Of a DNA stretch of 64,000 nt, positions 23,256-64,000 are shown one piece after another. How positions within the stretch are numbered: the stretch's first letter is position 1; every line of letters begins with the position of its first letter. Under the pieces are notes generated by a model, which was not told the origin of the DNA, ran no database searches, and saw only the letters and a program-made list of their open reading frames with translations. The translations under genes and the position numbers were made by a program. The stretch is from Botryllus schlosseri (taxonomy: Eukaryota). The DNA lies in the NCBI GenBank assembly GCA_051294905.1, contig CM119383.1, positions 12,090,001-12,154,000 on the forward strand, written 5' to 3'.

Positions 23256-24414
23256 GTAAATCGCCAGGAAAGTTTTACAGTTTTTGGCAGGTTGTGATTG
23301 ATTTACATGTAGCCAGACTTCATCATCATCATCATTGGTTTATTAGCAATTTTATCAGTTCAATACACCACAAAAAATGCGATACAATGAATAGACAGGA
23401 AGATGTCGACTTGGATCCGTTTTGCCTAAATATATGTGCATGCGCTTTATCGTTTTCAGGGAATCAGGATTAAAATTGAAGAGATTTATATCAGTGGACG
23501 ATAAATAGAGATTAAAATGTTGCAGCTTGTAGGCATAAATTAGAGACCATTCATACTACAAATAACACATAGATCTGAATGGTACATATTATTAGGTGCA
23601 ACAGATCCTCCAACCATCATAACTTTATTGAAATTTTCATCAAATCAATAGGCCTACACCACAAGATTGCGATATAATGAAAAGATATAGGAGGGTGCCG
23701 AAACGACTTGGTGTAGTCTTTTGATCAGACCCACCTCAACTGCCAGCACTATACGTTGAAAGAGACTTTCTATACCCATTATGATATGAAAGTACTCAGT
23801 ATATACTTTGATGTCATCCTGAAAGAACTACATGCTGTTACAAATGCAATGTTCCCAGAGTGATTACACATAAGTGCACTAGACCCGGAACTCTATACTA
23901 GGGCCTATATAACTTAGTCATCATGCATTGCAGTACTTTTCTCTCTTCTCTCTTCACACACATGCGTATCTCTTGTCTCAGTTGATTTGATATTCATACA
24001 CATTCATCTCTATATAAAATATATTTCAAAGAGGCATTCCCGCATGAGTGATGCTGTCGGGCCAAGGGCTTCATGATTAGTCTTATACTTCTGGGTTCTG
24101 ATTATGCCGACTTGGGTAAATATTGAGTCATAGGCCCCACCATTCATAATGGATATCAGACTCGCTAATTGTCATCTGGCTGTCACTATTAGGCTGTGTT
24201 GGGTATGTTCATGTTCACCCCTGTAATCACGTTTTGGAGGGCCATTTTATTAGTTTTTGTCCCAGTGTTATTCTAGCAGAAATGACATTAGGTGTTAATC
24301 AGAATTGATTCAATCAGTAAATAATTTCTTATTTCAGTGGGGTCGTTGATATTGCTATGTTTTGGAATAAGTAATTGATTGGGCAAATATAAAATCATCT
24401 AATCTGTATTTGAC

Positions 24415-25911
24415 ATGGATACCGAGATTGCCGACTTGGAGAGTTTCATCGACAGTTATGTTGCCGAGGACGATTGTATCGCTTCCACAACATTCACTAA
24501 TAGTTCCGCTGCTAACAATGAATATGAATACAATGATAAAGAATTTGAAGAAGAGCTAAAAGAACGTCAAAGTCGCCAAGACTCCATGATCCGTGCCATG
24601 TCATCCCAGCGCCACGCCAATGGAGCCGCAGATCCTATCGGATTGTCTTCAGATTTCTACACAGCTGAATATTTGCAAGAAGCACCCCATTCTTTTTACA
24701 CTTCTATCGCCGAAGCGGGTTTGCCGTATGCACCTTATCCCAATGACTACCATTTCAATCCAATGGTTGATAGCCATCCGCCTTCACAGCCGTATCTTGA
24801 TGACGTTGGCATGCCAAATTTTCATATACCCGACAGTGGTGCATCGTCACTAAATGCTGAACAACACAGAAATATTTCAAACAACGATCTGAGGCACCGG
24901 TTAAACGGTAAAAAGCGGATAAATAGCCAAAGAAAAGATCTACCCGGCCAAACGGCGGGCCATGCCAATAACAATCGCAGAATAAATAAAGGGCAATCAA
25001 CAGATAAACGTGCAGATAGCAAATCTGTTACTACCAACCCACTTATTCAAAATAGCGATAATTACTCCAGTGACCGTGCGAACAGTGGAAAATCAAAACC
25101 CACTGCTATTAAGCCGCACAGTCGACACAGCTCACAGTCAAGTTCCAGCGAGAGCTCGAGCTCGGCAAAAAACAGTATCGTATCCGACCGCAGTAAATCG
25201 GAAGTGCACTCTTGGCTGCATCGGGATGCCAAAGCCGGCAAACAGCCGCTAGAACGTCAATTCCAAAATATGAAAGTGTCAAAAAAATCGGACCTTTCCA
25301 AATTACTAAAATCTGCACATGCGTTCATGATTACCGAGGAGAAAATGAAGGAGGTCGCGGAAATGATTTGCAAAAAAGCAATGAAAAATCCAGCCTCCGC
25401 CCAAAGCGGCGCTGTGTTGTCCAGTGAGATGTCGCATCGAATGGTTAATGGTACTAGTTTCCGTACTGTCCTTTTGAATGTAGTTCAAAGTCATTTTAAA
25501 AATCGCCAGCGAATGATTCTAAAAGCCATCGAAAGCAATGATAACGAATGGTGTGGTTTTGTGACGTTCCTCACAGAACTGTATCTGAATCTGCGCACTT
25601 CATCAAACGAGAGATTGAAGGCATTAGTCAACCCCGTATTTGATTGCTTTCACCTTACACTAGACCAGAAGCAGCTGAACCGTAAATTGTCCGAGTGTCT
25701 TTTCGATAATTTGAAAATAGCCGGGGCTTTCTTAGACGAAGCCAATCCACAAAGAATGACGCAGCTCATATCTCTTTTACGAGACACTTGCGTGGTTTCC
25801 AGTAACATGTCCCTTGAAGCGCGTAGAAATCTTTTGCAATCATTAGAATATTATGCACGGGGTTGGAAAAGTAATGCCTCTGACGAACCCTATTATCGTA
25901 GTGATACCTAA
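24415..25911 (+). CDS. CTIF: CBP80/20-dependent translation initiation factor (MIF4G domain), 498 aa, uninterrupted CDS
   Basis: N-terminal EIADLESFIDSYV matches CTIF EIEELERFIDSYV. The C-terminal MIF4G has V.GTSFRTVLLN.VQ..F, W.GFVTFL.EL..NLR.SS.E..K.LV.PVF.C and R..LLQ.LE.YA.GW. The middle is low-complexity Ser/Asn/Arg-rich. Confidence 0.92.
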   Translation: MDTEIADLESFIDSYVAEDDCIASTTFTNSSAANNEYEYNDKEFEEELKERQSRQDSMIRAMSSQRHANGAADPIGLSSDFYTAEYLQEAPHSFYTSIAEAGLPYAPYPNDYHFNPMVDSHPPSQPYLDDVGMPNFHIPDSGASSLNAEQHRNISNNDLRHRLNGKKRINSQRKDLPGQTAGHANNNRRINKGQSTDKRADSKSVTTNPLIQNSDNYSSDRANSGKSKPTAIKPHSRHSSQSSSSESSSSAKNSIVSDRSKSEVHSWLHRDAKAGKQPLERQFQNMKVSKKSDLSKLLKSAHAFMITEEKMKEVAEMICKKAMKNPASAQSGAVLSSEMSHRMVNGTSFRTVLLNVVQSHFKNRQRMILKAIESNDNEWCGFVTFLTELYLNLRTSSNERLKALVNPVFDCFHLTLDQKQLNRKLSECLFDNLKIAGAFLDEANPQRMTQLISLLRDTCVVSSNMSLEARRNLLQSLEYYARGWKSNASDEPYYRSDT

Positions 25912-45400: not shown

Positions 45401-48400
45401 GGCATGAAGCCATTGGGATGCTTTAGTCTAGGGCAGTGATTCCCAACCGCGGCCCTGAGGGCCGCATGCGGCCCCCAACTAGCCTAATTGCGGCCCCCAC
45501 AAAAACATTGAGATATCGATCTATGAAAACAAAATATATTTAAAAAATACTTTTGCTTGGCTTGGAGTCTGGAGTTTTCAATTAGGATTGCAGGCAAGTT
45601 GTGAGTAGACTGCTAAGATTACGTCACTGCTGTTTCAATGCAATGTGCCCTAACTTTCCAGTTGAACGGGCAGTACCTATAGATATAGGTATAGTTAGAG
45701 GAATTGACAGGACCGTAACCGTCGCACCTCAAGCCCCCCAATTGGGGGGAGCGAGCTCGAAGGGGGCCCAAAATTATTTAGTGAATCAGCATAAATTATA
45801 GAGTAATTTATGAAAATTTATGCATCTTTTTCAAAGATTTTTCGCGCTGCGCGCGATATCAAGTTATCAAGTACCTTAATTATTGGGTACTCTTCGACCA
45901 AGATAAAATACGCAAGATTTATAGAAGTGGGCATATCGGCGTTAGCCAATGCCGCGCCCACGCCACACGTAGACATTTAAAGTTTTAGGCCATGTAACAT
46001 GCGACTCCAAGAAGTGTGCCAGAACGGTCGGCAGCGAGAAAACCTTGGCCGAAAAGGACTGCCCACGCTGACCGAAAACTTCGTTATGTATATTCAATAT
46101 ACATATAGGTATAATTGACCATAGGCGCCTAAATGACTGGCGGCGAATGTTCCTGTCTTGGCAATCTGAACGTCACGAGACAAATAGGCTACCATCCCGC
46201 AGGGAAGAATTATATGCCAGTGAAGAACTACCAATTAGAAATCGTGTGCATCTTTTAGTTTAATACGTTTGGGCGATTTTATCTTTTTTGATATAGCAGA
46301 CTGGAGGTCACGAAATAACAAATAACATCATGTAACGAAGTGGTACCAACGGGTCCGCCCGTCCGAATATGTTTAATTGTTATTTACGGGCCCTACAGTT
46401 TCCAAGACACATCACTCAGCTCTACCGGTAAATCTGATTAGGTGAGCAGAGAGGACAAGTAACTGATTGCAATATATATGCAATTCCCGATCTTATTGAC
46501 CCATTTCATTTTGAATTATCGAAAATTTTCGCGCACCACGCTGGCTCACTAAACGGGGATCCTGATTTCTTGGCAGAAGCGAACAACGGCATGAGGGGTC
46601 GGTTTATCACCCTATTGGAGCTCAAGACCTAAGTGTTCTGGGGGGCCTGACGAAGTGCTGTTTCGTTCCTGCCACCGCACGAAGATGTTTATTTATTATT
46701 GAGTGGTCCTACTTTTTCAAACACAACTCACTCGGCTCAACCGGTCAGTCTGAGTACGTGAGCAGAGAGAGGATAAAAATTGATACCAATATATTAGCAA
46801 TTCCGATAATATTGACCGATTCAATCATGAATTATAGAAATTTTTCGCGCTTCGCGCGATTTCTCGAGACAAGCTCCCTGAAACGAACACCTGATTTAGA
46901 TGATAAATAGCGGTAAACAGCCATCTATCCTGAGAGGGTCTGGGGGCTTCGAAGTTCGGTCTATCACCCTATGGGGAGCCCAAGAGAAACGTTTTTTTGG
47001 GGGGAGGGGCTGACGAAGTGCTGTTACGGCCCTGGGTAATGATAACTAATTTACGGATAGATGTGTAACAAGTGACTCACGATTGAATACGCCGAGATGC
47101 GTACTGCTTAGCCGGCAAAATGCAGCATAATTGGTAGTCCTATAGCTCGCGACCCAAGCATCCGAATAATTTGATATGTCAGTGTTTATCGAAAGCAAGG
47201 GTCGCACTGATTCCAAAAATACGAATTGAAATCTCGCCAGGGCAATAAAATTACTCCGAAATAGCCAGCAAAGGTTGATTGTTCTGAGCAACGGGAGCGC
47301 GGCAACACAATGGCCAATGGCGTCAAGCGAATGATCGGAACAATGCCAATTTTCATATTTTGGTGACTATTTTGGGTTCCTTTCATTGCCCTGGTATTTG
47401 TGCGGCCCCGGCCGTACTCTGAAATTCTGAATTTGGCCCTGCCATCGAAAAAGGTTGGGAACCACTGGTCTAGGGTGTTCAACCTGTGGGTACTTGACTA
47501 AAGGAACCGCATTTGATATAAAAACATTAAAAAATTAAAATGAAAACGTTCGGCATGCGAGTTGGTAATACTTCAAGATTTTGTCCGCTGCATAAAAAAG
47601 GTTTCTGACCCCTGCACTGGAAATTAAAAATTCCGATTTATCAATTGACTGCTAGCAAACCAAACCTAATCAAAGATATCATTATCCGGTAGGCCTACAA
47701 ATAGTAAATTTTAAGTAACCACAAATCACTAATGAAATAGGTACGAATAAATGGGCGAAACAACAATAATCAAGAACTTACCTGTACATGCCACTCGTTT
47801 TCGAGTACGTGTCGTGAACTTTCGTCTTGAATTCGTTGATAGACATCGTCAGAATATCTCTCTGCCCGAGCACCTCGGCTTTCACCGTGATATCTCCGTG
47901 CTTCTCTGCGAAATACTCCAAATAGTCCGGCTGGTCGGAAAGCGCATCGTGCACGATGCCCATCACAAAGTCGGCAGAATTCGGCTTCGTTTCCAAGAAG
48001 GACAGGCGACAAAAATCGTCTGCGAATAAATCTCGATCCGCTTCCGACATTTCCATCAACTCGTGCTTGTAGGCGTGCAGGACGGGCGCTTCCCCGTTCG
48101 GGCACGTCTCGACGTGTACATATTTCCGAAATTTTTGATTTGAGAACGGGAACTTGTCAACAATCTCCAAATCTTCAGGCAGAGCTTGGAAATACGAAAC
48201 AGACGGTACGTACGGTAACCTTGTCTTATCGCCATTTTCTATCTCTGATTTTTCATCGGAAGGCTCCGTTTTCACAGGAGTACCGACAAATATCTCCTCT
48301 TTAACGGGTTTTTCCGGTTCAGATTTTTCAGAATCAGATTTTTGTACTAACGCCGTGTGTTCCGGGGAGGATAATTCAGAGTCTGATGAAGAATTTGATG

Positions 48401-49478
48401 AACTACTTGAAGACGAAGAAGATGATGATAACGATGAAGAAGAGGCATCAGAGTCGCTGCCAGAGTCTTCGTCTTTACGGTGTGGACTTTCAATTACCGT
48501 CTCATTGACTTCTGGTGTTGCGGGTCGTTCCGTTTTTATTATCGGTGTAATACCGGTTCCGTTGGTACTTGTTTTCTCACCGCTATCGTGATCTGAATTT
48601 TTTCTATATTTTTTCCTCTTCGGCTCTTTAGAATATTTTACAGAGTCCGGACTGCGTTCGCGTTTTATTTGACTAGTGGGGTGCGGAAAATTTATGTTCC
48701 TATCAAACATATCGGTTTTACTTTTGAGCGGACTATCGGTCTTACCTTTTTTCTGCGATTGTTCGCGATTTCGAACACCGCCTTCGTGTTTGACGTTAGA
48801 CTGAATTTGCGATTTGATCACGCTTTTTTCGTGCTCTTTTTTATCGGGTAAGACATTGACAGAGTTTGATTTAGATAACGAGTGTGGGTTAGCAGTGTTT
48901 TCGATTACTTTTTCCCGACATTGAGCCGACTCTGTGGTGTCACTGTTCAGAATATTGTCGAACACATTGTCACCGAGGTCACTGTGAGTTCTTTTACGCG
49001 GATGCGTGGATTCTAGTTCTTGCTGAGATGGCGACGGTACTTCCCGCAGGACAGCATCTGCCATTTCTGTGATTTTAATATTCCCGGCATTCTGACGATT
49101 CCTTTCTTTGACGTGCTTCAATCTCTTCTGCTTGTTGGGCTTCGCGTCATTTGCACCATGTGTTTTGATGCCATTATTCTTTGCCGACTCCGCAACAGGT
49201 TGCGATGCGGTTGCGTTAACAGGTTTTGTCGACGGTTTCCAATGTTTTGAATCTCCGTTACTGCCGTTTTGGTGGGACTTTGGCGTGGGAAGTGCTGGCT
49301 TTCGAACGTGATTGCCGGGCTTCGATTTGACGGGACTTGGTAACTGTGGCTTCTTCCGTTTGAACTGTACCAGATTGATGGGGTCGGAGAACAGCCCTGG
49401 TAGGTCGCATGTCGTCAGTATGCGAGCTTTGGGTTTGTGCAACGAATGTAGTTTGTCGGTTTTCAAAGGAGAGCTCAT
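33440..49478 (-). CDS. RSBN1: Round spermatid basic protein 1-like (DPY-21 family JmjC-like H4K20 demethylase), ~813 aa, 5 exons
   Basis: Exons 49478-47782, 42740-42492, 38145-37966, 34996-34888, 33646-33440 (2442 nt, phases match). Conserved motifs: [114 protein letters not shown]1 versus RSBN1L cannot be resolved. Confidence 0.95.
35235..36481. mobile_element. Charlie/hAT-type non-autonomous element (host 1) in RSBN1 intron 3
   Basis: TIR CAGTGGTTCCCAA/TTGGGAACCACTG. TATTAG flanks both sides, but only 6 bp match cleanly. Internal palindrome GTGGGGAATTCCCCAC at 35251-35266. Confidence 0.8.
35670..36415. mobile_element. Nested hAT-type element, family E (746 bp)
   Basis: Perfect 12-bp TIR CAGGACCGTAAC/GTTACGGTCCTG. 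TSD GTGGGGAA/GTGGGCAA (7/8). The interior is shared with ~46005-46680. Confidence 0.85.
42984..44720 (+). mobile_element. Decayed pogo-like (Tc1/mariner superfamily) transposon, 1737 bp
   Basis: TA-flanked 24-bp TIRs (22/24 match): GGGGGGGTGGGGGAACTTGAGTA and TACTCAAATTCCCCCATCCCCCC. Frameshifted remnants: [24 protein letters not shown] and SGIPYEAL (HTH-psq-like, ~43518-43640), [13 protein letters not shown] (~43840-43890) and DWLVIQY...FLGQV...FPIPE (44016-44237). No DDE core seen. The family call is inferred from motif memory. Confidence 0.7.
45434..47467. mobile_element. Charlie/hAT-type non-autonomous element (host 2), 2034 bp, in RSBN1 intron 1
   Basis: TIR CAGTGATTCCCAACC/GGTTGGGAACCACTG. 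Perfect 8-bp TSD GTCTAGGG at 45426-45433 and 47468-47475. Confidence 0.9.
45708..47034. mobile_element. Nested family E element with internal ~350-bp tandem duplication of its right part
   Basis: CAGGACCGTAAC...GTTACGGCCCTG. TSD GGAATTGA/GGTAATGA (6/8). A degenerate internal right end lies at ~46640-46672; the units ~46330-46675 and ~46680-47034 are collinear. Confidence 0.8.
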
Positions 49479-50268
49479 TTCATCATTTTGCAGCTTATGA
49501 TTTTATTGAAAATAGATCTGTTGAAAGGTTGATAAGTTTTCAATGAAGTAACGATCTGACAACAAAAATGTGTCGCATTTTTTAATCACTTGTGACAAGG
49601 GTCCTGCGACAGAATTTCCTTTTCTGAAAATATGTCTAACGTAACGCTGCAAGTGCGGTGAAGTGCCGAGATGGATTTTTCGGCACATGACTTTCGTTTT
49701 TAGATTTTAGAACAAGCTAATACAGCCACTTCATCTGGTATTGTGTATCTAGGTTCATATTCAAGTCAATGAGCAATTACATAACATGGGCAGGATTAAT
49801 TTTTGCGGATAATACTTTAATTTGTTTAATGATGGTCGGTTATAGGAGTTGAAGCTAATCGAGTTATCAAATACCATGCTAATTTCTCTCATTGTCTGTG
49901 GAGCCCCTATTTTAAAGTGAATGGTAGAGATAGAGCTGGTTCGATTATGAGTAAATCGTTTACGAATTAACTTCCTGTTTCCAATTTAGAATCAAGTTGG
50001 TATAGCCGTATAGTTATATTACCAGTACAGTACTCAAGGAACTAGATGACTGTCATACATCTTTCTGTTCTGATCGTGAATTTAGTTTTTTAGTCAAAAC
50101 ACATCTACGAGTATAATTGTGTATATGTCATCCCTGATTGGCTGATTCAATGTTGAGACTGTGTGTTATGGCTGAGTCAGTGTATCATAGTGTCGACAGA
50201 AGTGTCTGAGGTTTCACACTTACAGTAATAATAAAACCGTACTATCCGCGTGTATCTTATCGACTCAC

Positions 50269-53591: not shown

Positions 53592-56500
53592 ATGCCTAAA
53601 ATTAGTGATAGCAGTGGCAATATTCGCATTCCCGCGAAATCGTCGAAACGCGGTTGGGTGCGATGCGATCGTATGCTGGCTGGCAAAACAGTGCTGATAA
53701 CTGGGGCTAACTCTGGAATTGGGCTTGAAACTGCGATTGACTTGGCACGCCGAAAAGCAAAAGTCATCATCGCATGCAGGGATCCCAAAAGAGGAAATGA
53801 TGCAGCAGAGACGGTATGAACCTTGAGTATTTTATATATTTACTGATCATGCATTTATGTACTTCCTCGGGAAACATCATGATTTTGTTCAGACAATTTT
53901 GGTGTGTTCAATAATTTCCATATATCGATTGAATTTAGATCAATCGATGCTCAAATTCTCGCGATGCCACAGCTTGTGTCCTAGATCTGGCTTCGTTTGA
54001 ATCAATACGTACCTGTGTTGATAAATTACTACGCGAAGAAGCGAGGTTGGATATACTAATCAACAATGCAGGTCAGGTTTTTAGCACGATACAGCTAAAT
54101 TACAATTTTGCAATCACGCACAACGTAAATCGCATCGGTCATCCACGATCGTAGAATGCGGTGTTTTCCTTAGCTTATGTGATGAGAATAATCTCAATCT
54201 TTGATAGTTGAACCCTTCAGCACCCTATCACGAGATGTGCTGACACTTTGAAATTTCCCGATATCAGCATCATTGCATGTTAATGTTTTGTTTTAGTACG
54301 AAATAAATTCCCGCTGGCCGTAGCCATTGATATCTGCGATTACTTCTGCTTTGCGAATTAAAGTGATTCTGAAAAGTAATGTCTATGGATGACAAGCATT
54401 ACATATTTACATTTTACATGTTTTGCCATCACTCATCAGCGATAAAATAATATCATAGCCTGCTGATAATTGTACGAACGAACGAACCCGTTTACGACAT
54501 CGATTTCTCGAGTATCTCCTGAATCAACGCACCAGGAATATGTTCCTCATCTTATGCGGATATTTCTATGTAGATTGTAGACTATGTGTCATTATTATGA
54601 ATTTGACAGTTTATTACTATGTGGAGACCCAGACGTTGGGTGTTTGATAAATTTCACCGAGTCGTATGGACAACAAACTTAGTATCATAATGTTGTCATA
54701 CTTTTATTGCATAGAAATATTATCAAAATTTTATCAAAATACACCAGCCAAGGCTGTCTCAACAAAAAGAGTTTGTGTACCATTTAAAAATAGTACATTG
54801 AACCCTCTCATATTCGACATTTCATGCTGGTGACGTCATATTTTGTGATACGATTGTTGATATACGATGTTCTTTTGAATTTTCTAACAGTTGCTGTGGA
54901 TTACTGCTGACGATTGTCAGCCGAAAATATTCGGGTTCATTTCAATATGAATAGCCTATACTATTCGATTGTAGGCCTATATTGAAGTTCTGTATCTCCA
55001 AGAACCTGTTCAAATAGAAATATTAGTCAACATTAATTAACGATGAGATGGTAGCACGGGACCTATACGATACGTAGGCCCCGGATAGAAAATACAATGA
55101 CATAACACTAACAACACTCGGAAACCTATAGATGCAGGCAGAAACTGCGGTTTCTGCACTCGGATGTCCTATTTCAAGTTATTGCAACATCATATATGAG
55201 CCTGGCCGTGTTTAAATGCGGTCCTCTGTAACCCAAATATTACTATCTGTCATGCGAGGTGGTCTGAATGAAGGATATCAAGGAATACAATACTAAATCA
55301 TGATCAGTATAGATTCTTTATTGAAATGCCAACTTTCGATTGATTTTAGGCTATATGGCTAGATATTGGATCGATGCGTCACCGAATTTATTCTTGTGCA
55401 CTGTGCACTGTGCAGATGTCGCAAATTCGGCTCCGTGCGCAAATTATATGTATACCTTGTTAACGATGAATCGCAGAGAATTGACATGTGCCATATTTAT
55501 GTAGTAGGCCTGTGTGGTATTGCTACTGAGTAGCTATCGAACTCATTTTGACCTTATCGACTTGTCGCCGAATGAAAGAGACGCGTCATTAACGACGAAT
55601 TGTAGCGGAACGGTGACCTATTTTTCCAGGTGTCATGATGTGTCCGAAATCGGCCACCAAGGACGGGCATGAGATGCATTTCGGAGTGAATCATTTGGGT
55701 CATTTTCTGCTCACTCTCTTGTTACTCGATTTAATCAAGGTCTGGTTAATGTTACTTCAGCATCCTATAGTTAGGCTACTATTACATATTAATTGATTGA
55801 TTTCCCGAAATATAATTCAGAGGAGCGCTCCAAGCCGGATCATCACTCTTTCGTCAGTCATGCATACAGAGATGTACAACGCTTACATCCACTGGGATGA
55901 CCTGAATCTGGATAGAGGCTACGTCGCACGGGATGCCTATAGCCAGAGCAAACTTATGAATGTGCTTTTTTCAAGAGAGCTCTCGAAGCGATTGAAAGGT
56001 AAAAACGCTCGGGAATGCATACAATAAACCCAAGGACAAGGGTTGACATATCGGACACAGGCAATAAAATGGTTCACCGCATTAAGGCGCCAGAACTGGG
56101 AATTTACTTCAGTTGTATCGGGCCACGGGGAAATGTCGAAAATATATATGGTGCTACCGATCGCCCAATGAAGATCTTAGTCGCAATACATCTTTACGGG
56201 CCTGATGCGACGTATATCTATGAAGCTGAATAGAGACATTAACATGACCTCACCGAAAAATTATGACTTGTATGCAGAATGTGGACGTACTATATGCACT
56301 AGTGACAGCCGTATGGCGTATCATATTCTAAACCATAGATATTACTTATGAATCACTTCGAGATAAATATGCCTATAGCCTGCAACTTCTGCGACCATTT
56401 CCATCAGCCAGGCTACGGGTTTATATTAGATATTACACTATTTGCAACCAGAAGTGGTCAGTAACGAAGTACATCTTCTTTTTCGAGTACTCAAGTTGGC

Positions 56501-57141
56501 GTTGCCTATTCGTATTCAAGTGCTTTTATTTCTAGACTATACTTCCACTTAACAGTTTTCAGTTTTTAAGAAAAACCTGGCAGAGAATATTAGTTACTTT
56601 TTGCTCACTTGTAAATCACTATACCTCATCTACTTCTAGTTGAGTACAAATTTACGACATTGCTTGCTACTTCCACTTTATTAGCAGCGATGACTACTTT
56701 GATCAGCTGCATTTGCAGTGTTCTTAATCCCACTGACTCGCTATGCTATAGGTACTGGCGTCACTACATACTGCGTCCATCCGGGTCTGGTTAGGACCAA
56801 CATCCTGCAACACGTCGGGGAAAACACATCATGCTGGGACTCACTATTTTGTTGCGTGTCAAAATTAACCAAGTACTTTTGGAAAACGCCCGAGCACGGA
56901 GCGCAAACATCTATCTACTGCGCCATTGCACCGGAACTCGAAGACGAAACAGGGTTATACTATTGGTACGTATCGTCGAGAAATCGGGTTAGTCTCACTT
57001 GAAAATATCCGTTCCGGTCACAGTGACTGCAAGAAGAAAAGAGAAGCTCCGCGCGGAAGAGATGATGCCGCCGCGGAAAGATTATGGAAAATAAGTTGCG
57101 ACATTACCGGTACTGACAATATCGCCATCGATGAAAATTGA
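53592..57141 (+). CDS. Short-chain dehydrogenase/reductase, retinol dehydrogenase 11/12/13/14-like, ~324 aa, 6 exons
   Basis: Exons 53592-53813, 53939-54071, 55630-55739, 55821-55998, 56752-56965, 57024-57141 (975 nt, phases match). Motifs: [13 protein letters not shown] (basic residue suggests NADP(H)), [27 protein letters not shown], catalytic [29 protein letters not shown] small upstream exon (53420-53451) may extend the N-terminus. Confidence 0.92.
54841..55010. repeat. Family A copy 5, SDR intron 2
   Basis: TTTTGTGATACGATTGTTGATATACGATGTTCTTT...GTCAGCCGAAAATATTCGGGTTCATTTCAATATGAATA...ATTGAAGTTCTGTA. Confidence 0.75.
56449..56710. mobile_element. MITE family B copy, reverse orientation, in SDR intron 4
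   Basis: Begins CAGAAGTGGTCAGTAACGAAGTAC, the reverse complement of the 26755 copy's right end. Ends GACTACTTTGATCAGCTGC. TSD degenerate. Confidence 0.7.
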
Positions 57142-57722
57142 CGTCTGTTACTGCTCACCTAAACAGAATGGCGAGAACTGAGGTATATGGGGTTGTAAAA
57201 CCCGGACTTGAAACTTCAGTCGAAAAGAGGTGTGATGGCGTCTACAGTTCTTCCGAAACATTGAAATCGCTGCTTTGGTGGATAGATAGTTATTGTGCAT
57301 TACTAAAACTATCGACATTGATGCAATTTCACTTTCTCCTTCCGATGGATGCGGTCCGTGTAGCAGATCGCCCATTGAAACCTATTTTGCCATGCATCGC
57401 GTGTATAATATCAAGATATGTATATTGCTCAGGCGATGTCAATTTATTGTATGAAAATTACGCTTGATGACGCAACAAATGGAAAGCGGAAGTAGCAAAT
57501 GACGATAACGTATCATCAGAAATAGGCCTGTAATTATTTGAACTGTTGCCTAATTTCACAGCTTCTGGTATATCGAACGTAGGATAGATATTTGAATTCT
57601 AATATATTTTTGAAAAACGTCGAAACTGCATTTGATTGAATGATCAGGAGTATTGGAACTAAGTTATATAGACAGCTCTAACCGGGCTCGAAAATATAAA
57701 TCGTATGCGTGGTCGATATTAA

Positions 57723-58009
57723 AGGGGCACTGCGCTCTAAAAATGATGAGGTCTCAAATTGAAAGGCAAAACGAAAGAAAAATTTTGGCCGCAGCCGTTC
57801 TCTTCAGAACGCCACCGTAATGGAGCTGTAATGTATTGAAATTTCCAGAGTTGCAGCACGCTCCAGCAGTCACGCAGAGATCGAACTTTATTTCAATACA
57901 TTACAGCTCCATTACGGTGGCGTTCTGAAGAAAACGGATGCGGCCAAAATTATTTTTTCGTTTTGTCCTTCAATTTGAGACCACATCATTTTTAGAGCGC
58001 AGTGCCCCT
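57723..58009. mobile_element. Shorter, internally deleted copy of the same Kolobok-type MITE
   Basis: TTAA|AGGGGCACTGCGCTCTAAAAATGATG...CATCATTTTTAGAGCGCAGTGCCCCT|TTAA. The arm sequence is shared with 15997-16680. Confidence 0.88.
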
Positions 58010-58499
58010 TTAATGTCGAGCAGAGAATGTTGAGAGCGTTTCTTTTGTGATCACAATTATACAAATACCAGAACATCGTTTCCAGCCAAGTCAGGTGGTT
58101 AACTTGAAACGACGACACGTACTCTTTAGAATCCGCTCTCAATCGTCAGCAATAAAATTGAGAAACTCGGAAAGGCGCATAACCTGTATTGCTATCAATG
58201 GAGCCGAAAAAAATACATAAAACGAAGGCAACCAACATAGTCACATTACATAATTTGGCTCGTATAACTCAAAGGAACGAAACACATCGAATTACAAAAC
58301 CAGATCGTGATCTCAACGCATTTCAGATGCACCTGCCATCTCAGAAAAATGATCATTATAAACTATTTTGCATATGCATATTGCTCAATTTTATAAATAC
58401 GGTCGTGACGCAAAACTACCTTTTCATGGATATCAGGGGTGGCCAACCTGCAGGCAGTTCTTTGTGGTGGCATAAAAGGTACATATTTGAACCTTGACC

Positions 58500-58614: not shown

Positions 58615-59146
58615 GTTTGAAACATCGGTTTTTTGCATTTTTGTTCAAAGCTCAACCTCAGGCATGACACATATGAGATGAAATAAAACACTGTTTTGGA
58701 AGTGGCGATGTGGAGGTGCTGTCGTGATAACGTGGACACAGTGAATATACTGTAAAATGTTTGCATTAATACTATAGCAAATTAGCTAATATACCTCACA
58801 GTACAGTTTTCTTAATTAACGGCGAGGTCGTCTAGATTTTCCAGGTTATTTAGTAACAAGCTAAGTATATCTAATATGAGATAAGGACTATATAAATATG
58901 AATTGTTTGACGGGTGCCAATAAATGTACTGTGACGGACAACACAAAAGCTGCAATGAGTGAGGAGTCCGTAAATCTTATCTGGCATATTGCTCACGAAG
59001 TGGCATGTCGACATGAGACTGTTATACAACATTGAGGAGTTTAAACGAGCCTGGACAGCTCAGTGCAGAAGCTAGGCTCTGAATCAGATACAAATGATCG
59101 ATTCCATATAGTTAGAATTCGGTGGTGTGTGAAAGCAAGATTAGCG

Positions 59147-62100
59147 ATGCAAGACGACAACAAAGTTAGATGGTTTAAAAGTTTATTGTTGGTCACCATA
59201 ATTTCCATGTGGGTGAGTATATTTTTTGTCGAATCATGCTGAATTGATTGAAATGAGTAGGCGTCTAGATGGAGCCAAATGCCTTCAACAATCAACAAGT
59301 TAATAATTTTGGCCTAAAGAATAATAGTTTTCGATGGACAAGTTGATGTGATATATAATATCTGTAAGCAGGATGTCTGCGGCAAGGTTTGGTTATTTGG
59401 AACTGCTGATGAATGTGATTGTTGATTTTGACAATAATAAATATGAATGTAGGCCTATATATCCGTTGTAATATGGTTACCGTACGTCCTTTTTTCAAGA
59501 GGATTAGCCTCTTTTTTGACTTTTTTAAAGTGTCCTCGGAGGACGCCCAAATGTCCTATTTTTTGAGAATTTTGGTTAAATATCTGGCAAAATCGACTTA
59601 GATACAGCAAATCAGCACCGAAGTAACGCTCCGCCGGGTATTTCGGTAGCTGGGCCGGAAAGTTGACCTTTTTTTAGTCAACCGACCACGATGCGGGAAA
59701 AATTTACCATTTTTTCAGGATTTTCCTCCGGTTTTGCAAGTCTGAAAATTTTGAAAACGTGTCCTCTTTTCAGATTTCCAAAACATGGTAACCCTACCGT
59801 TGTTCCCATCAATGGTTTAGTAAAGTAGCCACGGCGTCCGTGACAGGCGCTCCGGGATAGCATGGGGAATAAACTCTGGGGGTGCTGACTGCTGATATCG
59901 TTGTGATTCCATCCGTAGCCCGTATAGGCGAGGCGTGTGAGAACCAGGATAGACATTTTAGGTTTGTGGTCGGTCAACTTTTGCCTACACGGTACACGGT
60001 ACGGGAAAACACAGGTATTAAGTATAAATGGAAGCACCTGCATGTAGTCATTCAATACTAATCGGCTTATCGGTCGCCTGTATCAACACAACTCAAATCG
60101 ACAAACATCGCACCATACTCACTGTGGGGAGTCATTATCGGTAACGCAGGTTATCTCCGACCAAATTATTTTGAAATGCAAATACACTTACATGCCGATA
60201 AGCAAACACTGTTATCTAAATTCACTCACGTTCAATGACCTTTTGCTGATCATTAATTGTAAGATATGCATCTTACTGGTCGAGAATTTTTCGGATTTCG
60301 ATATAAGGCACACAAGTCATCACGAAAGAATTTGCTTTCAACTTCTTCTTCCTGTCTAATCGCTTGTTATTGTTGCGAACATACACGTCTTGCTGTCATA
60401 TTTGCCTGCGTTATGCTGGACTCCTGTTGTTGAAATTTCAGATGGCTAATTGGCATACGTCACTGGTCAAACTAGCCCGCGTTATACTCAGGTTTAGACT
60501 TTTTTAGTCCACTGGTCCGAAGCAGAGAATATAATTCGTATAGCTAGGAAATCAACGCCACTTAGTTATATAGCCTTCCGTATGCGCTTGACAATATTTT
60601 ACATTCCAGGTAACTTCATTAACAATGATTGGGATCGCTTGCTGGATCCGAGACAACCTGAGCTCCATAATCGTCGTAGCGGACGGAACAGACGTTGGAA
60701 ACTTTTACATTCAGTCCTTCTTTCCGATTGTGTTCCCAGTACTGATAACAGCGTCTTGCCTCATGCTTGTTATCGGATGTGTGGGATGCTGTGGAACTTG
60801 CTCTGACAACAGAACGCTACTGGGATGGGTATGTAGGCTACTCTACAATGACATGGTTTACGAGGATCCCCGACCTTCATAGTGTCTGTGCGAGTCAACG
60901 ATCCTGTGCCGATAGTGTTATGACTAGGGCTGTGCAAAATCGAGTACCTGAGTGATTCGATTCTTAATCATCATTATCTGAATCATTATTCCGTATTATG
61001 CTTCGAGTCGAGTCGAGTATTCGAGTATCACTCATTATGACGTCAAAAGAGAATGGAAGAAGTCAAATTTCAAATATGTTCCTTTCTTACCACCCGAAAG
61101 AATTTAATGCCTGTATTATCCATCACATTAAAGATACTTTGGTACTTTTTTCGACCATACCGATTTCAATGCGCTTTGCGACATTGTGAGATGGTCAGGA
61201 TTTCGGAAATGGGTTATCTCAAGTAACGCTAGTAGCTTTGTACTATATGTTCCGTATGCTGTCATGCGGCCAATTGCGGTTTCAAGGCTTGCACATTGGA
61301 AAATAGCGCCGAAACTATAATTCTCGTCGATAAATAACTTTCAGTGGCGAGGAGCGTATAATTTCAGTACTCGACCAAATCATCTTTTACTACTCGACTC
61401 GAATCATTGAAATTAGGCTATTACTCGATTCAGAATCGAGTACTCGAATCATTATGCCCAGCCCTAGCCATGACCATACCAGAGCCATATCCGTAACAGT
61501 AGGCCCTACTTTTCTGAAATTTACCATGCGGCCCAGACCCTATAATGACTCACTTGAGAATGACGCAAACACTGAATAAAATTTTAGTTTTTCGTATCAC
61601 TGCTGGTGACCTTCTGCATTGAAATAAGCGCTGGAATAGCGGGGAAGTGGGATTGGAGTAACAACTCGAACAGGCGCGATGTGGACATGATGAATGAGAA
61701 AATGAAATCGATGGAATGGCAGCAAAGAGACTGGTTGAATCAAGCGTGGAAAGAGATACAAACGAAGGTAGACTAATTCGATTACTGGAGATTCCTCTCT
61801 TACACATTTCAAGCTAAAATCAACTATACGGCTCTTATACAGTTCAACTGTTGCGGCATAAAGTGGTCGGATGATTGGAAAAGTTACGGAAAACTCTCGA
61901 GTGGATGCTCGGACGGCGAGCAAAACGAAATTTTGCAATGTGGCGAAGCGCTGATCATTTTCCTTACGAAGACAACCATTCTACGTGTTGTACCGTTTCT
62001 AGCGTCGATATTGGGACTTCTACAAGTACGTATGCTACGTAGCTTGAATATATTTATGTACATTGCACGATGCACATACTAAATACACGCATCGGGCGGA

Positions 62101-63640
62101 GCCGTGATGACCTCACGGGCTCAGTTTTCACATAGAATTATTCAGAAGTGGTCAAGTTGTCGTAACATCTTAATTTCTACTGAAGCGCAAGTAGAAGTAG
62201 CGTAAGCAAGAAGGAAGTATATTTTAGGCCTAGTTTTGCCTAAACACTAAAAAATGTTAAGTAGAAGTGGAAGAATATACTAAAATCATAGCCATTTGAA
62301 TATGTAGAGCAAGTAGGCAGAACCGTACTTGAGTACTCCACAAAAGTAGAAGTACTTTGTTACTGACAACCTCTGGAAATCTCCGACCACGGATTGCTTA
62401 CTTGACGCCTTGCGTATCATCGGTGTCTTGTTTAGATAACGGTTTCCAGCGGCTATCATGCGTTCATCACAAGTAATTGATGAAATATATGTTTGTCCAC
62501 GCTAACTTAAACTATCTCTATACGCGCCCATTGGTTGAAAAATTACCATATTAAATCGATGCATTTCGATTAGCCTATTTGTGGTTTCATTGAACCGGTA
62601 CATTTTACAATGTACAATGTACATTGTGTACATATTACAAATCCAAACATCATTGGATTTCGATTTGTTACGTTTGCATCGAAGCGCTCCGTAGCCTGCT
62701 GAAAAATCCATTTTTCAAAGACTACAAAATCCACTCAATCACTCACCTCTAAGTAATAAATTACTATTTCCAGGTTACTGCCTTGATCGTCACTGCGAAA
62801 TTGTGGACATTAGCAAGTGTAGACGAGCGCATGAAGTTACCTAACACAACCTACGTCACGACTGCTGAACAGCCTAACTCGCAAACAGCAATACAACTCG
62901 AACCATTGCTGAAGACCGTTTCGGCGCCAACGTCGCGACATTCCACGCTAACAGCGCATTCATCCAGAGAGGAATTGAAGTTGAAATCTTTAAATTTTCC
63001 ACAAAAGAGCAAACTTTACAACGAAAGTTGCCCACAATGCATCATGAAATGGTACGAAGAGACCAAACTGATGACGTCTTCCAGACTTGAAGCCGAGTAT
63101 AGGCAATATCAAGCGCAACATAGCCGGTTACGGCGAGATAGGACGCGTCGTAGTGACGAACTGCTGCATAGTAGATCGTCAAGAGAGATACAAAGACAGC
63201 AGAGACCTAAATATAGCAGTCAACACATGGTTAAAAGCGCGAGTTACGGGAGCCCAACAGACTGGAGAACACCTAGCCTTCGTTCGGTTTCAAAAAGCTC
63301 GCGAGAATGTCACAGCGCTTCTTTGCCTAGAAGAAAACATCCTTACGTGCGGCAGCATCGTCGCTTCGATTACTCCCGAAACTTTATTCAGCGGCTATCG
63401 ACCATCCGAGCGTCCGGGGTGGCTGTGGAGAGCGATAGCTCATCAGAGCTCGACGAATCTCCCCGGGAAGAATTGGGCGATAGCCGTTGTTACAACACAG
63501 AAGCTGGATCTTCCTCTTCCGGCGACAGAGAGCCTTATTTTCACTATGTGAGAGATCGGCATATAAGCGAGCCTGGAAATGCAGTCGGGTACGTATTCGA
63601 AGTTCGGAAACAAAAAGCGTCCGACTACACAACTTTATGA
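59147..63640 (+). CDS. TSPAN12: Tetraspanin, TSPAN12-like, ~504 aa with very long C-terminal tail, 5 exons
   Basis: Exons 59147-59212, 60610-60828, 61588-61767, 61843-62025, 62774-63640 (1515 nt, all phase 0, GT-AG). Four TM segments, GCVGCCG and EC2 FNCCG. TSPAN12-like words from memory: WIRDNL (WMRDYL), FFPIVFPVLI (YFPVVHPVMI), LLGWFF (LLAWYF), DWLNQAW..IQ (RWLTHAW..FQ). The family call is secure; the orthology is less so. Confidence 0.85.
59471..59796. mobile_element. hAT (Blackjack-like) MITE in tetraspanin intron 1
   Basis: Ends TATGGTTACC/TGGTAACCCTA. Flanks CCGTTGTA and CCGTTGTT (7/8 TSD). Subterminal GTCCTC/TTTT motifs. Confidence 0.7.
60925..61466. mobile_element. hAT-type MITE family D (TCGAG-rich), 542 bp, in tetraspanin intron 2
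   Basis: TIR TAGGGCTGTGCA/TGCCCAGCCCTA (11/12). TSD GTTATGAC/GCCATGAC (6/8). (TCGAG)n subterminal arrays. Confidence 0.8.
62143..62375. mobile_element. MITE family B copy in tetraspanin intron 4
   Basis: CAGAAGTGGTCAAG...AAAAGTAGAAGTACTTTGTTACTGACAACCTCTG is collinear with 26755-27010. Confidence 0.75.
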
Positions 63641-64000
63641 CAACGGAACATCAAAAAATAAACCGTTCCACTGCTGCAACGTCATTCGCACAGAGACAAG
63701 TACAGAGTTATTGGAACAAATGAGAACTCTTGATGGGATTCCGTCAAGTAGGCCTATGTGAATGTAAGACGTTCGGGACAGCTCAACTGAAGGCGAAATT
63801 CGCTCCACTGCCATGGCATGATCTAACCAAGTTATACTCTGGAATCCTGGATTGTGATTTTTTTGGTGACTTTGTATTACCGAACGAGCTAACATTTCGT
63901 CTTAATAGAAATATTCCCACTCTGGAACTATATACAATACAGAGACAATATTGAAGAGCGTACATGATTTGATTGCCGTTCCCCGTCCATTGCAACGTTC

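What the first reader, a model, noticed from the sequence alone, without database searches (positions are those of the whole stretch)
62774..63640. Tetraspanin with a ~275-aa cytoplasmic tail ending in an ITIM- and PDZ-like motif
Seen: after TM4 the frame stays open for ~275 codons in a single exon. It has a helical R/Q/E-rich stretch (SRLEAEYRQYQAQHSRLRRDR), many basic Ser/Thr motifs (RHST, RRSD, KSASYGSP, HSASLP, RLST), an acidic Ser patch, and ends S-D-Y-T-T-L-stop. That end fits the ITIM consensus [ILVS]xYxx[LV], a YxxL sorting signal and a class I PDZ ligand (T-x-L). Known: most tetraspanin tails are under ~20 aa, and that of TSPAN12 is about 60 aa. Inference: a tetraspanin turned into a receptor-like signalling scaffold, together with the remodelled outer loop. 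This is the strongest novel-system candidate in the window.
Basis: partly seen in the sequence, partly recalled or inferred. Interest (0 to 1): 0.75.

Follow-up and report, generated by a model that had tools for sequence, protein, structure and literature searches.

The report
Sea-squirt tetraspanin with long conserved tail
A real, expressed sea-squirt gene encodes a four-pass tetraspanin membrane protein whose inner tail is roughly ten times longer than usual, mostly unstructured and kept by selection in related sea squirts, but nothing shows that it works as an immune-type (ITIM) signalling receptor.

Summary
Exon 62774-63640 is the last of five phase-0 exons of a 504-aa tetraspanin gene (59147-63640, + strand). 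It encodes the end of TM4 and a tail of about 275 residues ending SDYTTL-stop.

- **Expression:** spliced RNA-derived contigs from three studies join all five exons at the predicted GT..AG sites. One runs unspliced through the whole tail.
- **Conservation:** the tail ORF is intact in four other species, including Styela clava LOC120339925, which is annotated as uncharacterized. Synonymous sites are saturated while dN is 0.41. The islands kept are CxxC plus helices, KSAS...LPRRK, RLS[TP]IRASG, SRCYNTE and the end Y-x-T-L-COOH.
- **Orthology:** the exon structure and the neighbours (SDR gene upstream, IRAK-like kinase gene downstream) are shared with Styela. The downstream neighbour is also shared with Clavelina.
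- **Structure:** the tail matches no known family and is predicted mostly disordered.
- **Distribution:** only ascidian or unidentified-source relatives were found.

The conserved end fits a C-terminal YxxΦ sorting signal of the CD63/LAMP type in 5 of 5 tails. Class I PDZ and ITIM patterns each fit 4 of 5. The "receptor-like ITIM scaffold" reading is therefore untested and not specifically supported.

Verdict: a lineage-restricted long-tailed tetraspanin subfamily, a new variant of a known kind, of moderate interest.

The parts
59147..59212 (+). Exon 1: start codon, N-terminal cytoplasmic stub and first half of TM1
   Evidence: Model. The 59212/60610 junction is seen in spliced contigs of X13, X1 and X3 and in 2 raw RNA reads of X18. 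The N-terminus aligns with Styela P0003. There is no in-frame ATG further upstream in this exon.
60610..60828 (+). Exon 2: rest of TM1, small outer loop, TM2, inner loop
   Evidence: Pfam PF00335 Tetraspanin, E 4.2e-05 on this piece alone.
61588..61767 (+). Exon 3: TM3 and first part of the large outer loop (EC2)
   Evidence: Pfam PF00335, E 0.045 on this piece.
61843..62025 (+). Exon 4: CCG motif, variable part of EC2 (4 cysteines in all), first half of TM4
   Evidence: The 61767/61843 and 62025/62774 junctions are. This is the most polymorphic exon (13 differences in 185 nt in the X3 contig).
62774..62815 (+). Start of exon 5: second half of TM4 (VTALIVTAKLWTLA)
   Evidence: AF2 predicts a helix over residues 2-20 of the exon. 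TAKLW is conserved in relatives.
62816..63637 (+). Cytoplasmic tail, about 274 residues, mostly disordered
   Evidence: mean pLDDT 44.9; 218 of 288 residues below 50. No Pfam family matches. It is conserved in P0001-P0004.
63029..63160 (+). CxxC motif followed by two predicted helices (CPQC-IMKWYEETKL; SSRLEAEYRQYQAQHSRLRRDR...)
   Evidence: CxxC is present in 5 of 5 tails. Helices at 87-98 and 102-129 have pLDDT about 60-70. The block is 70% identical to the L001 species.
63233..63337 (+). Basic Ser-rich block KSASY.SPTDW..PSL...R.C.SASLPRRK
   Evidence: Invariant S155, S168, R177, C179, S181, L184, P185, R186 in five tails.
63380..63436 (+). Best-conserved island NFIQ-RLSTIRASG-VA.ESD (two R-x-S sites)
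   Evidence: Invariant N203, R207, L208, S209, I211, R212, A213, S214, A217, D221. The R-x-S sites are kept in 4 of 4 relatives.
63470..63526 (+). Island ELGDSRCYNTEAGSSSSGD (invariant Cys plus Ser run, acidic flanks)
   Evidence: Invariant G235, R238, C239, N241, T242, E243, S247, S249.
63620..63640 (+). C-terminal SDYTTL and the TGA stop
   Evidence: Y(-3), T(-1) and L(0) are invariant in five tails. In the three with DNA in hand or a complete annotated protein (window, L001, Styela) a stop follows directly. The 20-40 residues before the motif are not alignable.
63641..63862 (+). 3' UTR (at least this far)
   Evidence: RNA-derived contigs run on to 63843 (X3), 63862 (X1) and further pieces to 64000. 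An AATAAA lies at 63657.

Best explanation
Shown: this is the last exon of a single-copy, transcribed, five-exon tetraspanin gene. It has orthologues in other ascidians, in the same gene neighbourhood. The protein has an ordinary CD9/CD81-like four-helix core. Its C-terminal cytoplasmic tail is about 275 residues long and is under purifying selection.

Inferred: the tail is an intrinsically disordered platform. It carries short conserved docking and regulatory motifs:
- a CxxC plus amphipathic helices close to the membrane;
- Ser sites with Arg at -2 or -3, which are likely basophilic-kinase targets (RLSTIRAS, KSAS, SASLPRRK);
- an acidic Ser cluster;
- four invariant cysteines, which could be zinc-binding or acylation sites;
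- a free C-terminal Y-x-T-L.

The most likely job of that end is a tyrosine-based YxxΦ sorting signal read by clathrin-adaptor mu subunits, possibly competed by a PDZ protein as in CD63 and syntenin. On this reading the tail controls where the tetraspanin and its membrane partners traffic, and phosphorylation of the Ser islands modulates this. That the gene and its conserved tail are real is near certain. The sorting and scaffold mechanism is an inference from motifs and from tetraspanin precedent.
For: **Gene and transcript**
- The X3 contig of 1923 nt joins all five exons at the predicted GT..AG sites and runs uninterrupted over 62774-63843.
- The same joints occur in X1 and X13, which come from different studies. 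Raw RNA reads of X18 give thin cover.
- The tail is single copy in the 495.5-Mb genome.

**Tetraspanin identity**
- The orthologue P0003 (Styela clava XP_039264097) scores PF00335 at E 6.5e-23.
- It is 42% identical to the window's core and 31.5% identical in the tail.
- The nearest solved structures are CD9 (2.5e-12) and CD81.

**Constraint**
- Against the L001 species dN is 0.41 and dS is saturated (LWL85 2.09, ratio 0.19).
- Codon-position identities are 0.66, 0.69 and 0.40.
- Listed within-species SNPs in the tail are 12 synonymous to 9 non-synonymous, pN/pS about 0.22.
- The ORF stays open for at least 286 codons in five species.
- 34 columns are invariant, including all four tail cysteines of the window protein.

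**Orthology by context**
- Styela has the same five-exon plan with the tail as one exon.
- The SDR gene upstream is 64-73% identical to Styela's.
- The kinase gene downstream on the other strand matches those of Styela, Clavelina and L002.

**Disorder**
- AF2 mean pLDDT is 44.9, with helices only at 87-98 and 102-129.
- No Pfam family matches.

**C-terminus**
- YxxΦ-COOH fits 5 of 5 tails.
- Precedent: CD63 GYEVM-COOH is both an AP sorting signal and the syntenin PDZ site, and potential YxxΦ signals occur in 12 other tetraspanins (PMC4165315; PMC11078179).
- SDYQRL is the TGN38 sorting motif (PMC2133967).
Against: - No protein-level, localisation or binding data exist.
- Lysosomal-type YxxΦ-COOH signals of CD63 and LAMPs lie a few residues from the membrane (my own knowledge). 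Here the motif is about 270 residues away.
- The invariant Thr at -1 is not explained by the YxxΦ rule.
- The annotated Clavelina orthologue (P0006) has a long tail but lacks the CxxC-helix block and the YxTL end. It needs an extra predicted intron that contains stops. The motif set is therefore not universal in ascidians, or that gene model is wrong.
- Motif matches of 3-6 residues carry little information.
- Expression is low in the runs laid (contig depth about 10-20; few raw reads).
Confidence: 0.6

Rival explanations
1. One reading: the terminal S-x-Y-x-x-L is an ITIM. Once the Tyr is phosphorylated it recruits SHP/SHIP-type phosphatases, which makes the tetraspanin an inhibitory receptor-like signalling scaffold. 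A related version reads it as a hemITAM- or SH2-docking YxxL.
For: - The window, P0001, P0002 and P0004 fit [ILVS]xYxx[LVI].
- The Tyr and the Leu are invariant in five species.
- The tail is long, disordered and rich in kinase-type motifs, as in many signalling adaptors.
- The outer-loop exon is the most polymorphic part of the gene.
- A Death-domain kinase gene is a conserved neighbour.
Against: - The ITIM-defining residue at Y-2 is not conserved (S, S, S, A, L). Styela has Ala there, outside the consensus.
- An ITIM does not need to sit at the free C-terminus, yet here the motif is always the last four residues.
- There is no second Tyr motif in ITIM/ITSM or ITAM spacing.
- Neighbourhood alone is not evidence of function.
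- Nothing here tests phosphorylation.
Confidence: 0.1
2. The conserved free C-terminus is mainly a PDZ ligand. It anchors the tetraspanin to a submembrane PDZ scaffold, and the Tyr is only part of the PDZ contact.
For: - The motif lies at the extreme C-terminus in 5 of 5 tails, with a stop directly after it where the DNA or a complete annotated protein is in hand. The residues before it vary in length and sequence.
- T-x-L-COOH (class I) is present in 4 of 5 tails. Styela's L-T-L-COOH would be class II.
- CD63 binds the PDZ protein syntenin-1 through its last residues (PMC4165315, PMC11078179).
Against: - The class-defining position -2 is not invariant (Leu in Styela).
- Y(-3) and T(-1), which are less critical for PDZ binding, are invariant.
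- No partner is known.
Confidence: 0.2
3. The tail is not a functional part of the protein. It would be an annotation artefact, normally spliced to an earlier stop, or a decaying unconstrained extension.
For: - An AATAAA lies 17 nt after the stop, which fits a normal terminal exon but gives no support to this rival.
- The Clavelina model needs an extra intron that contains stops.
- AF2 confidence is low.
Against: - RNA-derived contigs from three studies cover the tail without any internal joint.
- The ORF is intact in five species although synonymous sites are saturated.
- dN/dS is about 0.2 and pN/pS about 0.2.
- Conserved islands include the very last residues.
Confidence: 0.03

Closest known systems
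Styela clava LOC120339925 (XP_039264097; P0003/P0005) and Clavelina lepadiformis LOC143459997 (P0006), both annotated 'uncharacterized protein'
   Same: Both are tetraspanins with a tail of about 300 residues. Styela has the same five-exon plan, and both share the Death-plus-kinase gene downstream. Styela also shares the SDR gene upstream. Styela keeps the CxxC, KSAS, LPRRK, RLSTIRASG and SRCYNTE islands and ends in YLTL.
   Different: The Styela core is 42% identical and the tail 31.5%. Styela and Clavelina have six EC2 cysteines, the window protein four. The Clavelina tail aligns at only about 17%, has an extra predicted intron and lacks the YxTL end. None of these proteins has been studied.
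CD63 (LAMP-3), tetraspanin with C-terminal GYEVM
   Same: It is a tetraspanin whose last four residues are a YxxΦ signal at the free C-terminus. That signal is read by AP complexes and overlaps a PDZ (syntenin-1) binding site (PMC4165315; PMC11078179). The window protein ends Y-T-T-L-COOH, and one relative ends G-Y-T-T-L.
   Different: The CD63 tail is only about a dozen residues long, so its signal lies next to the membrane (my own knowledge). Here about 270 disordered residues intervene. No orthology to CD63 was shown; the nearest solved cores are CD9 and CD81.
Long-tailed vertebrate tetraspanins (TSPAN12, peripherin-2/ROM1, TSPAN32)
   Same: They are tetraspanins whose C-terminal tails are longer than the family norm and functionally important. 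For example, the TSPAN12 tail contributes to its ADAM10 association (PMC5382171).
   Different: Their tails are roughly 60-90 residues and the proteins 300-355 aa (my own knowledge, not tested here). This protein has about 275 tail residues in 504 aa. No sequence similarity between the tails was found (only four hits in 1.84 billion proteins).
TGN38 sorting motif SDYQRL
   Same: It has the same S-D-Y-x-x-L pattern as the window's SDYTTL. SDYQRL is an experimentally defined tyrosine-based trafficking signal (PMC2133967).
   Different: TGN38 is a type I protein and its motif is internal, not at the C-terminus. The S-D prefix is kept only in the window's closest two relatives.
ITIM-bearing inhibitory receptors
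   Same: They have a cytoplasmic [ILVS]xYxx[LVI] pattern, which is present in the window protein.
   Different: The Y-2 position is not conserved among orthologues. There is no Ig or lectin ectodomain, and no evidence of phosphorylation or phosphatase recruitment.

Membership tests
Tetraspanin (Pfam PF00335) | Four transmembrane helices with short N-terminus, small and large outer loops | tested here: met
   Hydropathy peaks lie at residues 13-31, 62-80, 92-110 and 204-226 of the 504-aa model. The model aligns end to end with Styela P0003.
Tetraspanin (Pfam PF00335) | Profile match above the curated cut-off | tested here: inconclusive
   The spliced window protein could not be submitted as one reference. 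Single exons score 23.8 and 13.8 bits, below the 32.1-bit cut-off. The orthologue P0003 scores 82 bits, E 6.5e-23, and is 42% identical to the window core.
Tetraspanin (Pfam PF00335) | CCG motif and at least two further conserved cysteines in the large outer loop | tested here: met
   Exon 4 reads FNCCG...GC...QCG, four cysteines in all. The L001 relative has CCD instead of CCG.
Tyrosine-based YxxΦ sorting signal (CD63/LAMP-type, C-terminal) | Y-x-x-bulky hydrophobic residue in a cytoplasmic tail, conserved in orthologues | tested here: met
   The ends are YTTL, YTTL, YTTL, YLTL and YTTL in the five tails, always as the last four residues.
Tyrosine-based YxxΦ sorting signal (CD63/LAMP-type, C-terminal) | Lysosomal subtype: Gly before Tyr, and the motif within about 6-9 residues of the membrane | tested here: not met
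   Gly precedes Tyr only in P0004. The motif lies about 270 residues after TM4. The spacing rule itself is from my own knowledge.
Tyrosine-based YxxΦ sorting signal (CD63/LAMP-type, C-terminal) | Binding to an adaptor mu subunit and an effect on trafficking | not testable with these tools
   This needs peptide binding assays and mutant localisation.
Class I PDZ ligand | [S/T]-x-Φ at the free C-terminus, conserved | tested here: inconclusive
   It is met in the window (T-T-L) and in 4 of 5 tails. Styela has L-T-L, which is class II-like. The terminal position is kept in 5 of 5.
ITIM | [I/L/V/S]-x-Y-x-x-[L/V/I] in the cytoplasmic tail, conserved | tested here: inconclusive
   It is met in the window (S-D-Y-T-T-L) and in 4 of 5 tails. 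Styela has Ala at Y-2.
ITIM | Tyr phosphorylation and recruitment of SH2 phosphatases (SHP-1/2, SHIP) | not testable with these tools
   No phosphoproteomic or binding data are available here.

The most novel reading that the evidence does not exclude
This would be an ascidian-specific tetraspanin converted into a true signalling receptor subunit. Its fast-evolving, polymorphic outer loop would sense a partner or ligand. Its long disordered tail would transmit through a phosphotyrosine switch at the C-terminus (ITIM or hemITAM-like) and through phospho-Ser docking islands, perhaps in innate immunity or self/non-self recognition of a colonial sea squirt. The conserved Death-domain kinase gene next door hints at this theme but does not support it.
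Probability: 0.07. Interest if true: 0.8.

Novelty: new variant of a known kind. Interest (0 to 1): 0.45.

Why it matters
Tetraspanins are usually seen as small membrane organisers with minimal cytoplasmic parts. A subfamily that has kept a tail of 275-310 residues across ascidians shows that the scaffold can carry a large intracellular platform. The tail holds a handful of sharply conserved linear motifs, four invariant cysteines and a fixed Y-x-T-L-COOH end. This gives a compact, testable set of sites for asking how a tetraspanin is linked to trafficking and kinase signalling. The orthologues in public annotation are "uncharacterized", and I found no paper on them. The finding is descriptive and restricted to one lineage, and the terminal motif is of a kind already known in tetraspanins.

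Tried and rejected
**Tail searches that found no known family**
- Pfam finds nothing on the window tail or on any of the five tails.
- The ESM Atlas feature search of the tail gives only weak look-alikes among disordered proteins (0.83, low recognition). I treated this as no evidence.
- phmmer of the tail against 1.84 billion representatives finds only four relatives.
- A profile of five tails adds none.
- No tail similarity to any vertebrate tetraspanin or other protein was found.

**Limits on the core search**
- The search with the Styela core was restricted to proteins of 295-938 aa and found only Styela and Clavelina.
- I could therefore not name the closest canonical tetraspanin subfamily beyond CD9/CD81-like.
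- The spliced 504-aa window protein has no reference, so it was never submitted whole.

**Data that could not be fetched**
- DNA for P0001 could not be fetched because the sample file is too large.
- The exact P0003 sequence is not on record as a gene, so its close variant P0005 was used.

**Weak or unmatched pieces**
- The single SDR exon and the single kinase-like exon gave no Pfam hit on their own. Synteny was shown by tblastx instead.
- The Botryllus "tetraspanin-8" of PMC4523013 (testis and oocyte expression) could not be matched to this gene, because no sequence is available to me.

**Corrected and skipped**
- I first read the invariant Thr as PDZ position -2. Recounting shows it is position -1, and this is corrected throughout.
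- An RNA fold of the stop-codon region showed nothing special (z -1.08).
Full report
**1. What is in the sequence**

Translating window:62774-63640:+ gives 288 codons and a TGA stop.

The exon is preceded by a polypyrimidine/AG acceptor. It continues a frame that I could assemble from four upstream exons with GT..AG borders, all in phase 0: 59147-59212, 60610-60828, 61588-61767 and 61843-62025. The product is 504 aa.

Hydropathy shows four hydrophobic segments (about 13-31, 62-80, 92-110 and 204-226) and nothing hydrophobic after residue 235. Exon 4 holds the CCG motif. Exon pieces hit Pfam Tetraspanin weakly. TM4 is split by the last intron, so the last exon encodes about 14 membrane residues and then a tail of about 274. 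A 289-codon open frame has a chance probability of about 1e-8 at the local composition.

**2. Is it expressed, and is the tail spliced?**

I laid four public runs of the same species on 59100-64000.

- In run X3 a single contig of 1923 nt joins all five exons exactly at the predicted sites. It then runs without a gap or joint from 62774 to 63843.
- Runs X1 and X13, from other studies, show the same joints and cover the tail in overlapping pieces.
- These runs were only guessed to be RNA. Contigs that skip four GT..AG introns must derive from spliced RNA, and the tail exists only once in the 495.5-Mb genome, so a processed copy is unlikely.
- A 2026 raw-read RNA run (X18) gives two reads across the first junction and thin cover of the tail.
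- Depth is low throughout, so the gene is weakly expressed in these samples.

**3. Is the tail conserved?**

A word-indexed search and an exhaustive phmmer search of 1.84 billion representative proteins found only four relatives of the tail.

| Relative | Source | Identity to window tail | Note |
|---|---|---|---|
| P0001 | Logan assembly | 54% | ORF from a genomic contig |
| P0002 | Logan assembly | 49-51% | ORF from a genomic contig (L001) |
| P0004 | Logan assembly | 39% over the conserved islands | Last exon only |
| P0003 | Styela clava XP_039264097 | 33% (31.5% over the aligned tail) | Full length, 536 aa, "uncharacterized protein LOC120339925" |

P0003 is a bona fide tetraspanin (PF00335, E 6.5e-23) followed by a tail of about 300 residues.

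The genomic contig L001, for P0002, shows the preceding exon, the same phase-0 intron inside TM4, a single tail exon and a TGA directly after SDYTTL. The 488-aa database entry simply read through that TGA.

Measures of constraint:
- Against L001 the tail has dN 0.41 with saturated synonymous sites (LWL85 dS 2.09, ratio 0.19).
- Identity at codon positions 1, 2 and 3 is 0.66, 0.69 and 0.40.
- The SNPs listed between the reference and the RNA contigs are 12 synonymous to 9 non-synonymous in the tail, pN/pS about 0.22.

The second refutation test, a frameshifted or unconstrained tail in relatives, therefore also did not refute the finding.

**4. Orthology and range**

- Styela has the same five-exon plan with the tail as one exon.
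- In Styela the gene lies between an adh_short (SDR) gene upstream on the same strand and a Death-plus-protein-kinase (IRAK-like) gene downstream on the opposite strand. Clavelina shares the downstream gene, and L002 carries a kinase fragment there.
- In the window, the gene at about 53634-57105 is 64-73% identical exon by exon to the Styela SDR gene.
- A kinase-like exon about 4.6-4.9 kb beyond the window's end matches the downstream genes of Styela, Clavelina and L002 (tblastx 1e-19, 1e-8 and 5e-20).
- These are therefore positional orthologues.

The tetraspanin core (42%) and tail (31.5%) have diverged much more than the SDR neighbour (about 70%), so this gene evolves fast.

Clavelina lepadiformis LOC143459997 (P0006, 547 aa, core 45% identical to Styela) also has a long tail. 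That tail aligns at only about 17%, needs an extra predicted 195-nt intron that contains stops, and ends differently. Either that lineage has remodelled the tail or the gene model is wrong.

Notes by other agents of this scan call the genome Botryllus schlosseri. I did not verify the species, but the ascidian affiliation fits all relatives found. No non-ascidian relative of the tail was detected.

**5. Anatomy of the tail**

AlphaFold2 with the five-sequence alignment gives mean pLDDT 44.9, and 218 of 288 residues are below 50. The only elements are the end of TM4 and two helices at residues 87-98 and 102-129 of the exon, with pLDDT about 60-70.

Composition is 23% Ser+Thr, 17% Arg+Lys and 12% Asp+Glu, with net charge +13.

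In the five-tail alignment 34 columns are invariant. They cluster in islands:
- TAKLW at the membrane;
- C-x-x-C followed by the helices;
- KSAS...SP..W..PS;
- R-x-C-x-S-x-x-L-P-R;
- R-L-S-x-I-R-A-S-G-x-A, the sharpest block, with two R-x-S sites;
- G-x-x-R-C-x-N-T-E...S-x-S;
- the end Y-x-T-L.

All four cysteines of the window tail are invariant, although only 12% of columns are. This suggests metal binding or acylation. No Pfam family matches any tail, and the Atlas look-alikes are weak.

**6. The C-terminus**

In register the window ends S(-5) D(-4) Y(-3) T(-2) T(-1) L(0). Across the five tails Y(-3), T(-1) and L(0) are invariant. Position -2 is T, T, T, L, T, and the residue two before the Tyr is S, S, S, A, L. 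The 20-40 residues before the motif vary in length and do not align, yet the motif is always the last four residues.

| Pattern | Tails that fit |
|---|---|
| YxxΦ at a free C-terminus | 5 of 5 |
| Class I PDZ ligand | 4 of 5 |
| ITIM | 4 of 5 |

A terminal YxxΦ is a known feature of tetraspanins. CD63 ends GYEVM, which is read by AP complexes and overlapped by the syntenin-1 PDZ site. Potential YxxΦ signals are reported in 12 further tetraspanins (PMC4165315; PMC11078179). SDYQRL is the classical TGN38 signal (PMC2133967).

What differs here is the distance of about 270 residues from the membrane, and the unexplained invariant Thr at -1.

**7. Most likely mechanism**

Shown: the gene is real, spliced, single copy and syntenically conserved. 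Its tail is long, disordered and constrained, and it carries conserved linear motifs.

Inferred: the tail is a regulatory and trafficking platform. The terminal YxTL acts as a tyrosine-based sorting signal, possibly competed by a PDZ protein. The basic Ser islands would be kinase-controlled docking sites, and the cysteines would tether or fold part of the tail. I put about 0.6 on this package. The existence and constraint part is near certain, and the sorting part is about even odds. PDZ anchoring as the main role gets 0.2, ITIM or SH2 signalling 0.1, and an artefact or non-functional tail 0.03.

**8. Comparison and novelty**

Membership in the tetraspanin family is met. The tail has no known family.

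The closest functional analogue for the end is CD63. The closest analogues for "long tail" are TSPAN12, peripherin-2/ROM1 and TSPAN32, whose tails are several times shorter (my own knowledge). The orthologues in public annotation are uncharacterized, and literature searches found nothing on them.

I classify it as a new variant of a known kind: a lineage-restricted long-tailed tetraspanin subfamily. Interest is moderate (0.45). The length and conservation of the tail are unusual. The best-conserved motif is of a known type, the range is narrow, and no functional data exist.

Noticed in passing
window 61843-62025 (exon 4, variable part of the large outer loop); L001 701-892; L002 196-420: The outer-loop exon is the most polymorphic part of the gene. 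The X3 contig shows 13 differences in 185 nt, against 2 in 219, 4 in 179 and 29 in 1070 for the other exons. Of the listed SNPs, 6 are non-synonymous and 5 synonymous. The window and L001 species have four EC2 cysteines where Styela, Clavelina and the L002 species have six. L001 has CCD instead of the hallmark CCG.
   Followed up: partly
window 53634-57105 (+) and G000:C13 about 12158548-12158904 (L006 4548-4904, - strand): Microsynteny is conserved: an SDR/retinol-dehydrogenase-like gene, then the tetraspanin, then (convergent) a Death-domain protein kinase gene of IRAK type. All three neighbours are seen in the window genome and in Styela. Clavelina and L002 share the tetraspanin and the downstream kinase gene. 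The SDR is about 70% identical between the window species and Styela, against 42% for the tetraspanin core.
   Followed up: partly
window 59428-59919 and 60904-61559 (introns 1 and 2): Contig depth in all RNA-type runs is hundreds to thousands of times that of the exons, with many loose ends and odd joints. These are copies of high-copy, transcribed repeats (transposable elements) inside the introns.
   Followed up: no
window 57710-58022: A 133-nt inverted repeat, 93% complementary, with a 47-nt spacer (foldback or MITE-like element). It lies in the intergenic region between the SDR gene and the tetraspanin.
   Followed up: partly
window 47781-49502 (-) and 24403-25908 (+): These are the two longest stop-free frames in the window: 574 aa with no Pfam match, and 502 aa with a MIF4G domain (E 8e-14).
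   Followed up: partly
L004 10518-10712 (Clavelina lepadiformis): The annotated Clavelina orthologue removes a 195-nt stretch with several stops from the tail region as an extra intron. If it is not spliced, the protein would end after a tail of about 55 residues. The model needs RNA support.
   Followed up: partly
window 63657: An AATAAA lies 17 nt after the stop, yet RNA-derived contigs continue to at least 63843-63862 and in pieces to 64000. This suggests alternative or downstream polyadenylation.
   Followed up: no
P0002 (database entry, 488 aa) versus L001 1306-2166: The public gene call read through three TGA codons as Trp, fusing 200 spurious residues after SDYTTL. With the standard code the ORF ends at the conserved terminus.
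   Followed up: yes
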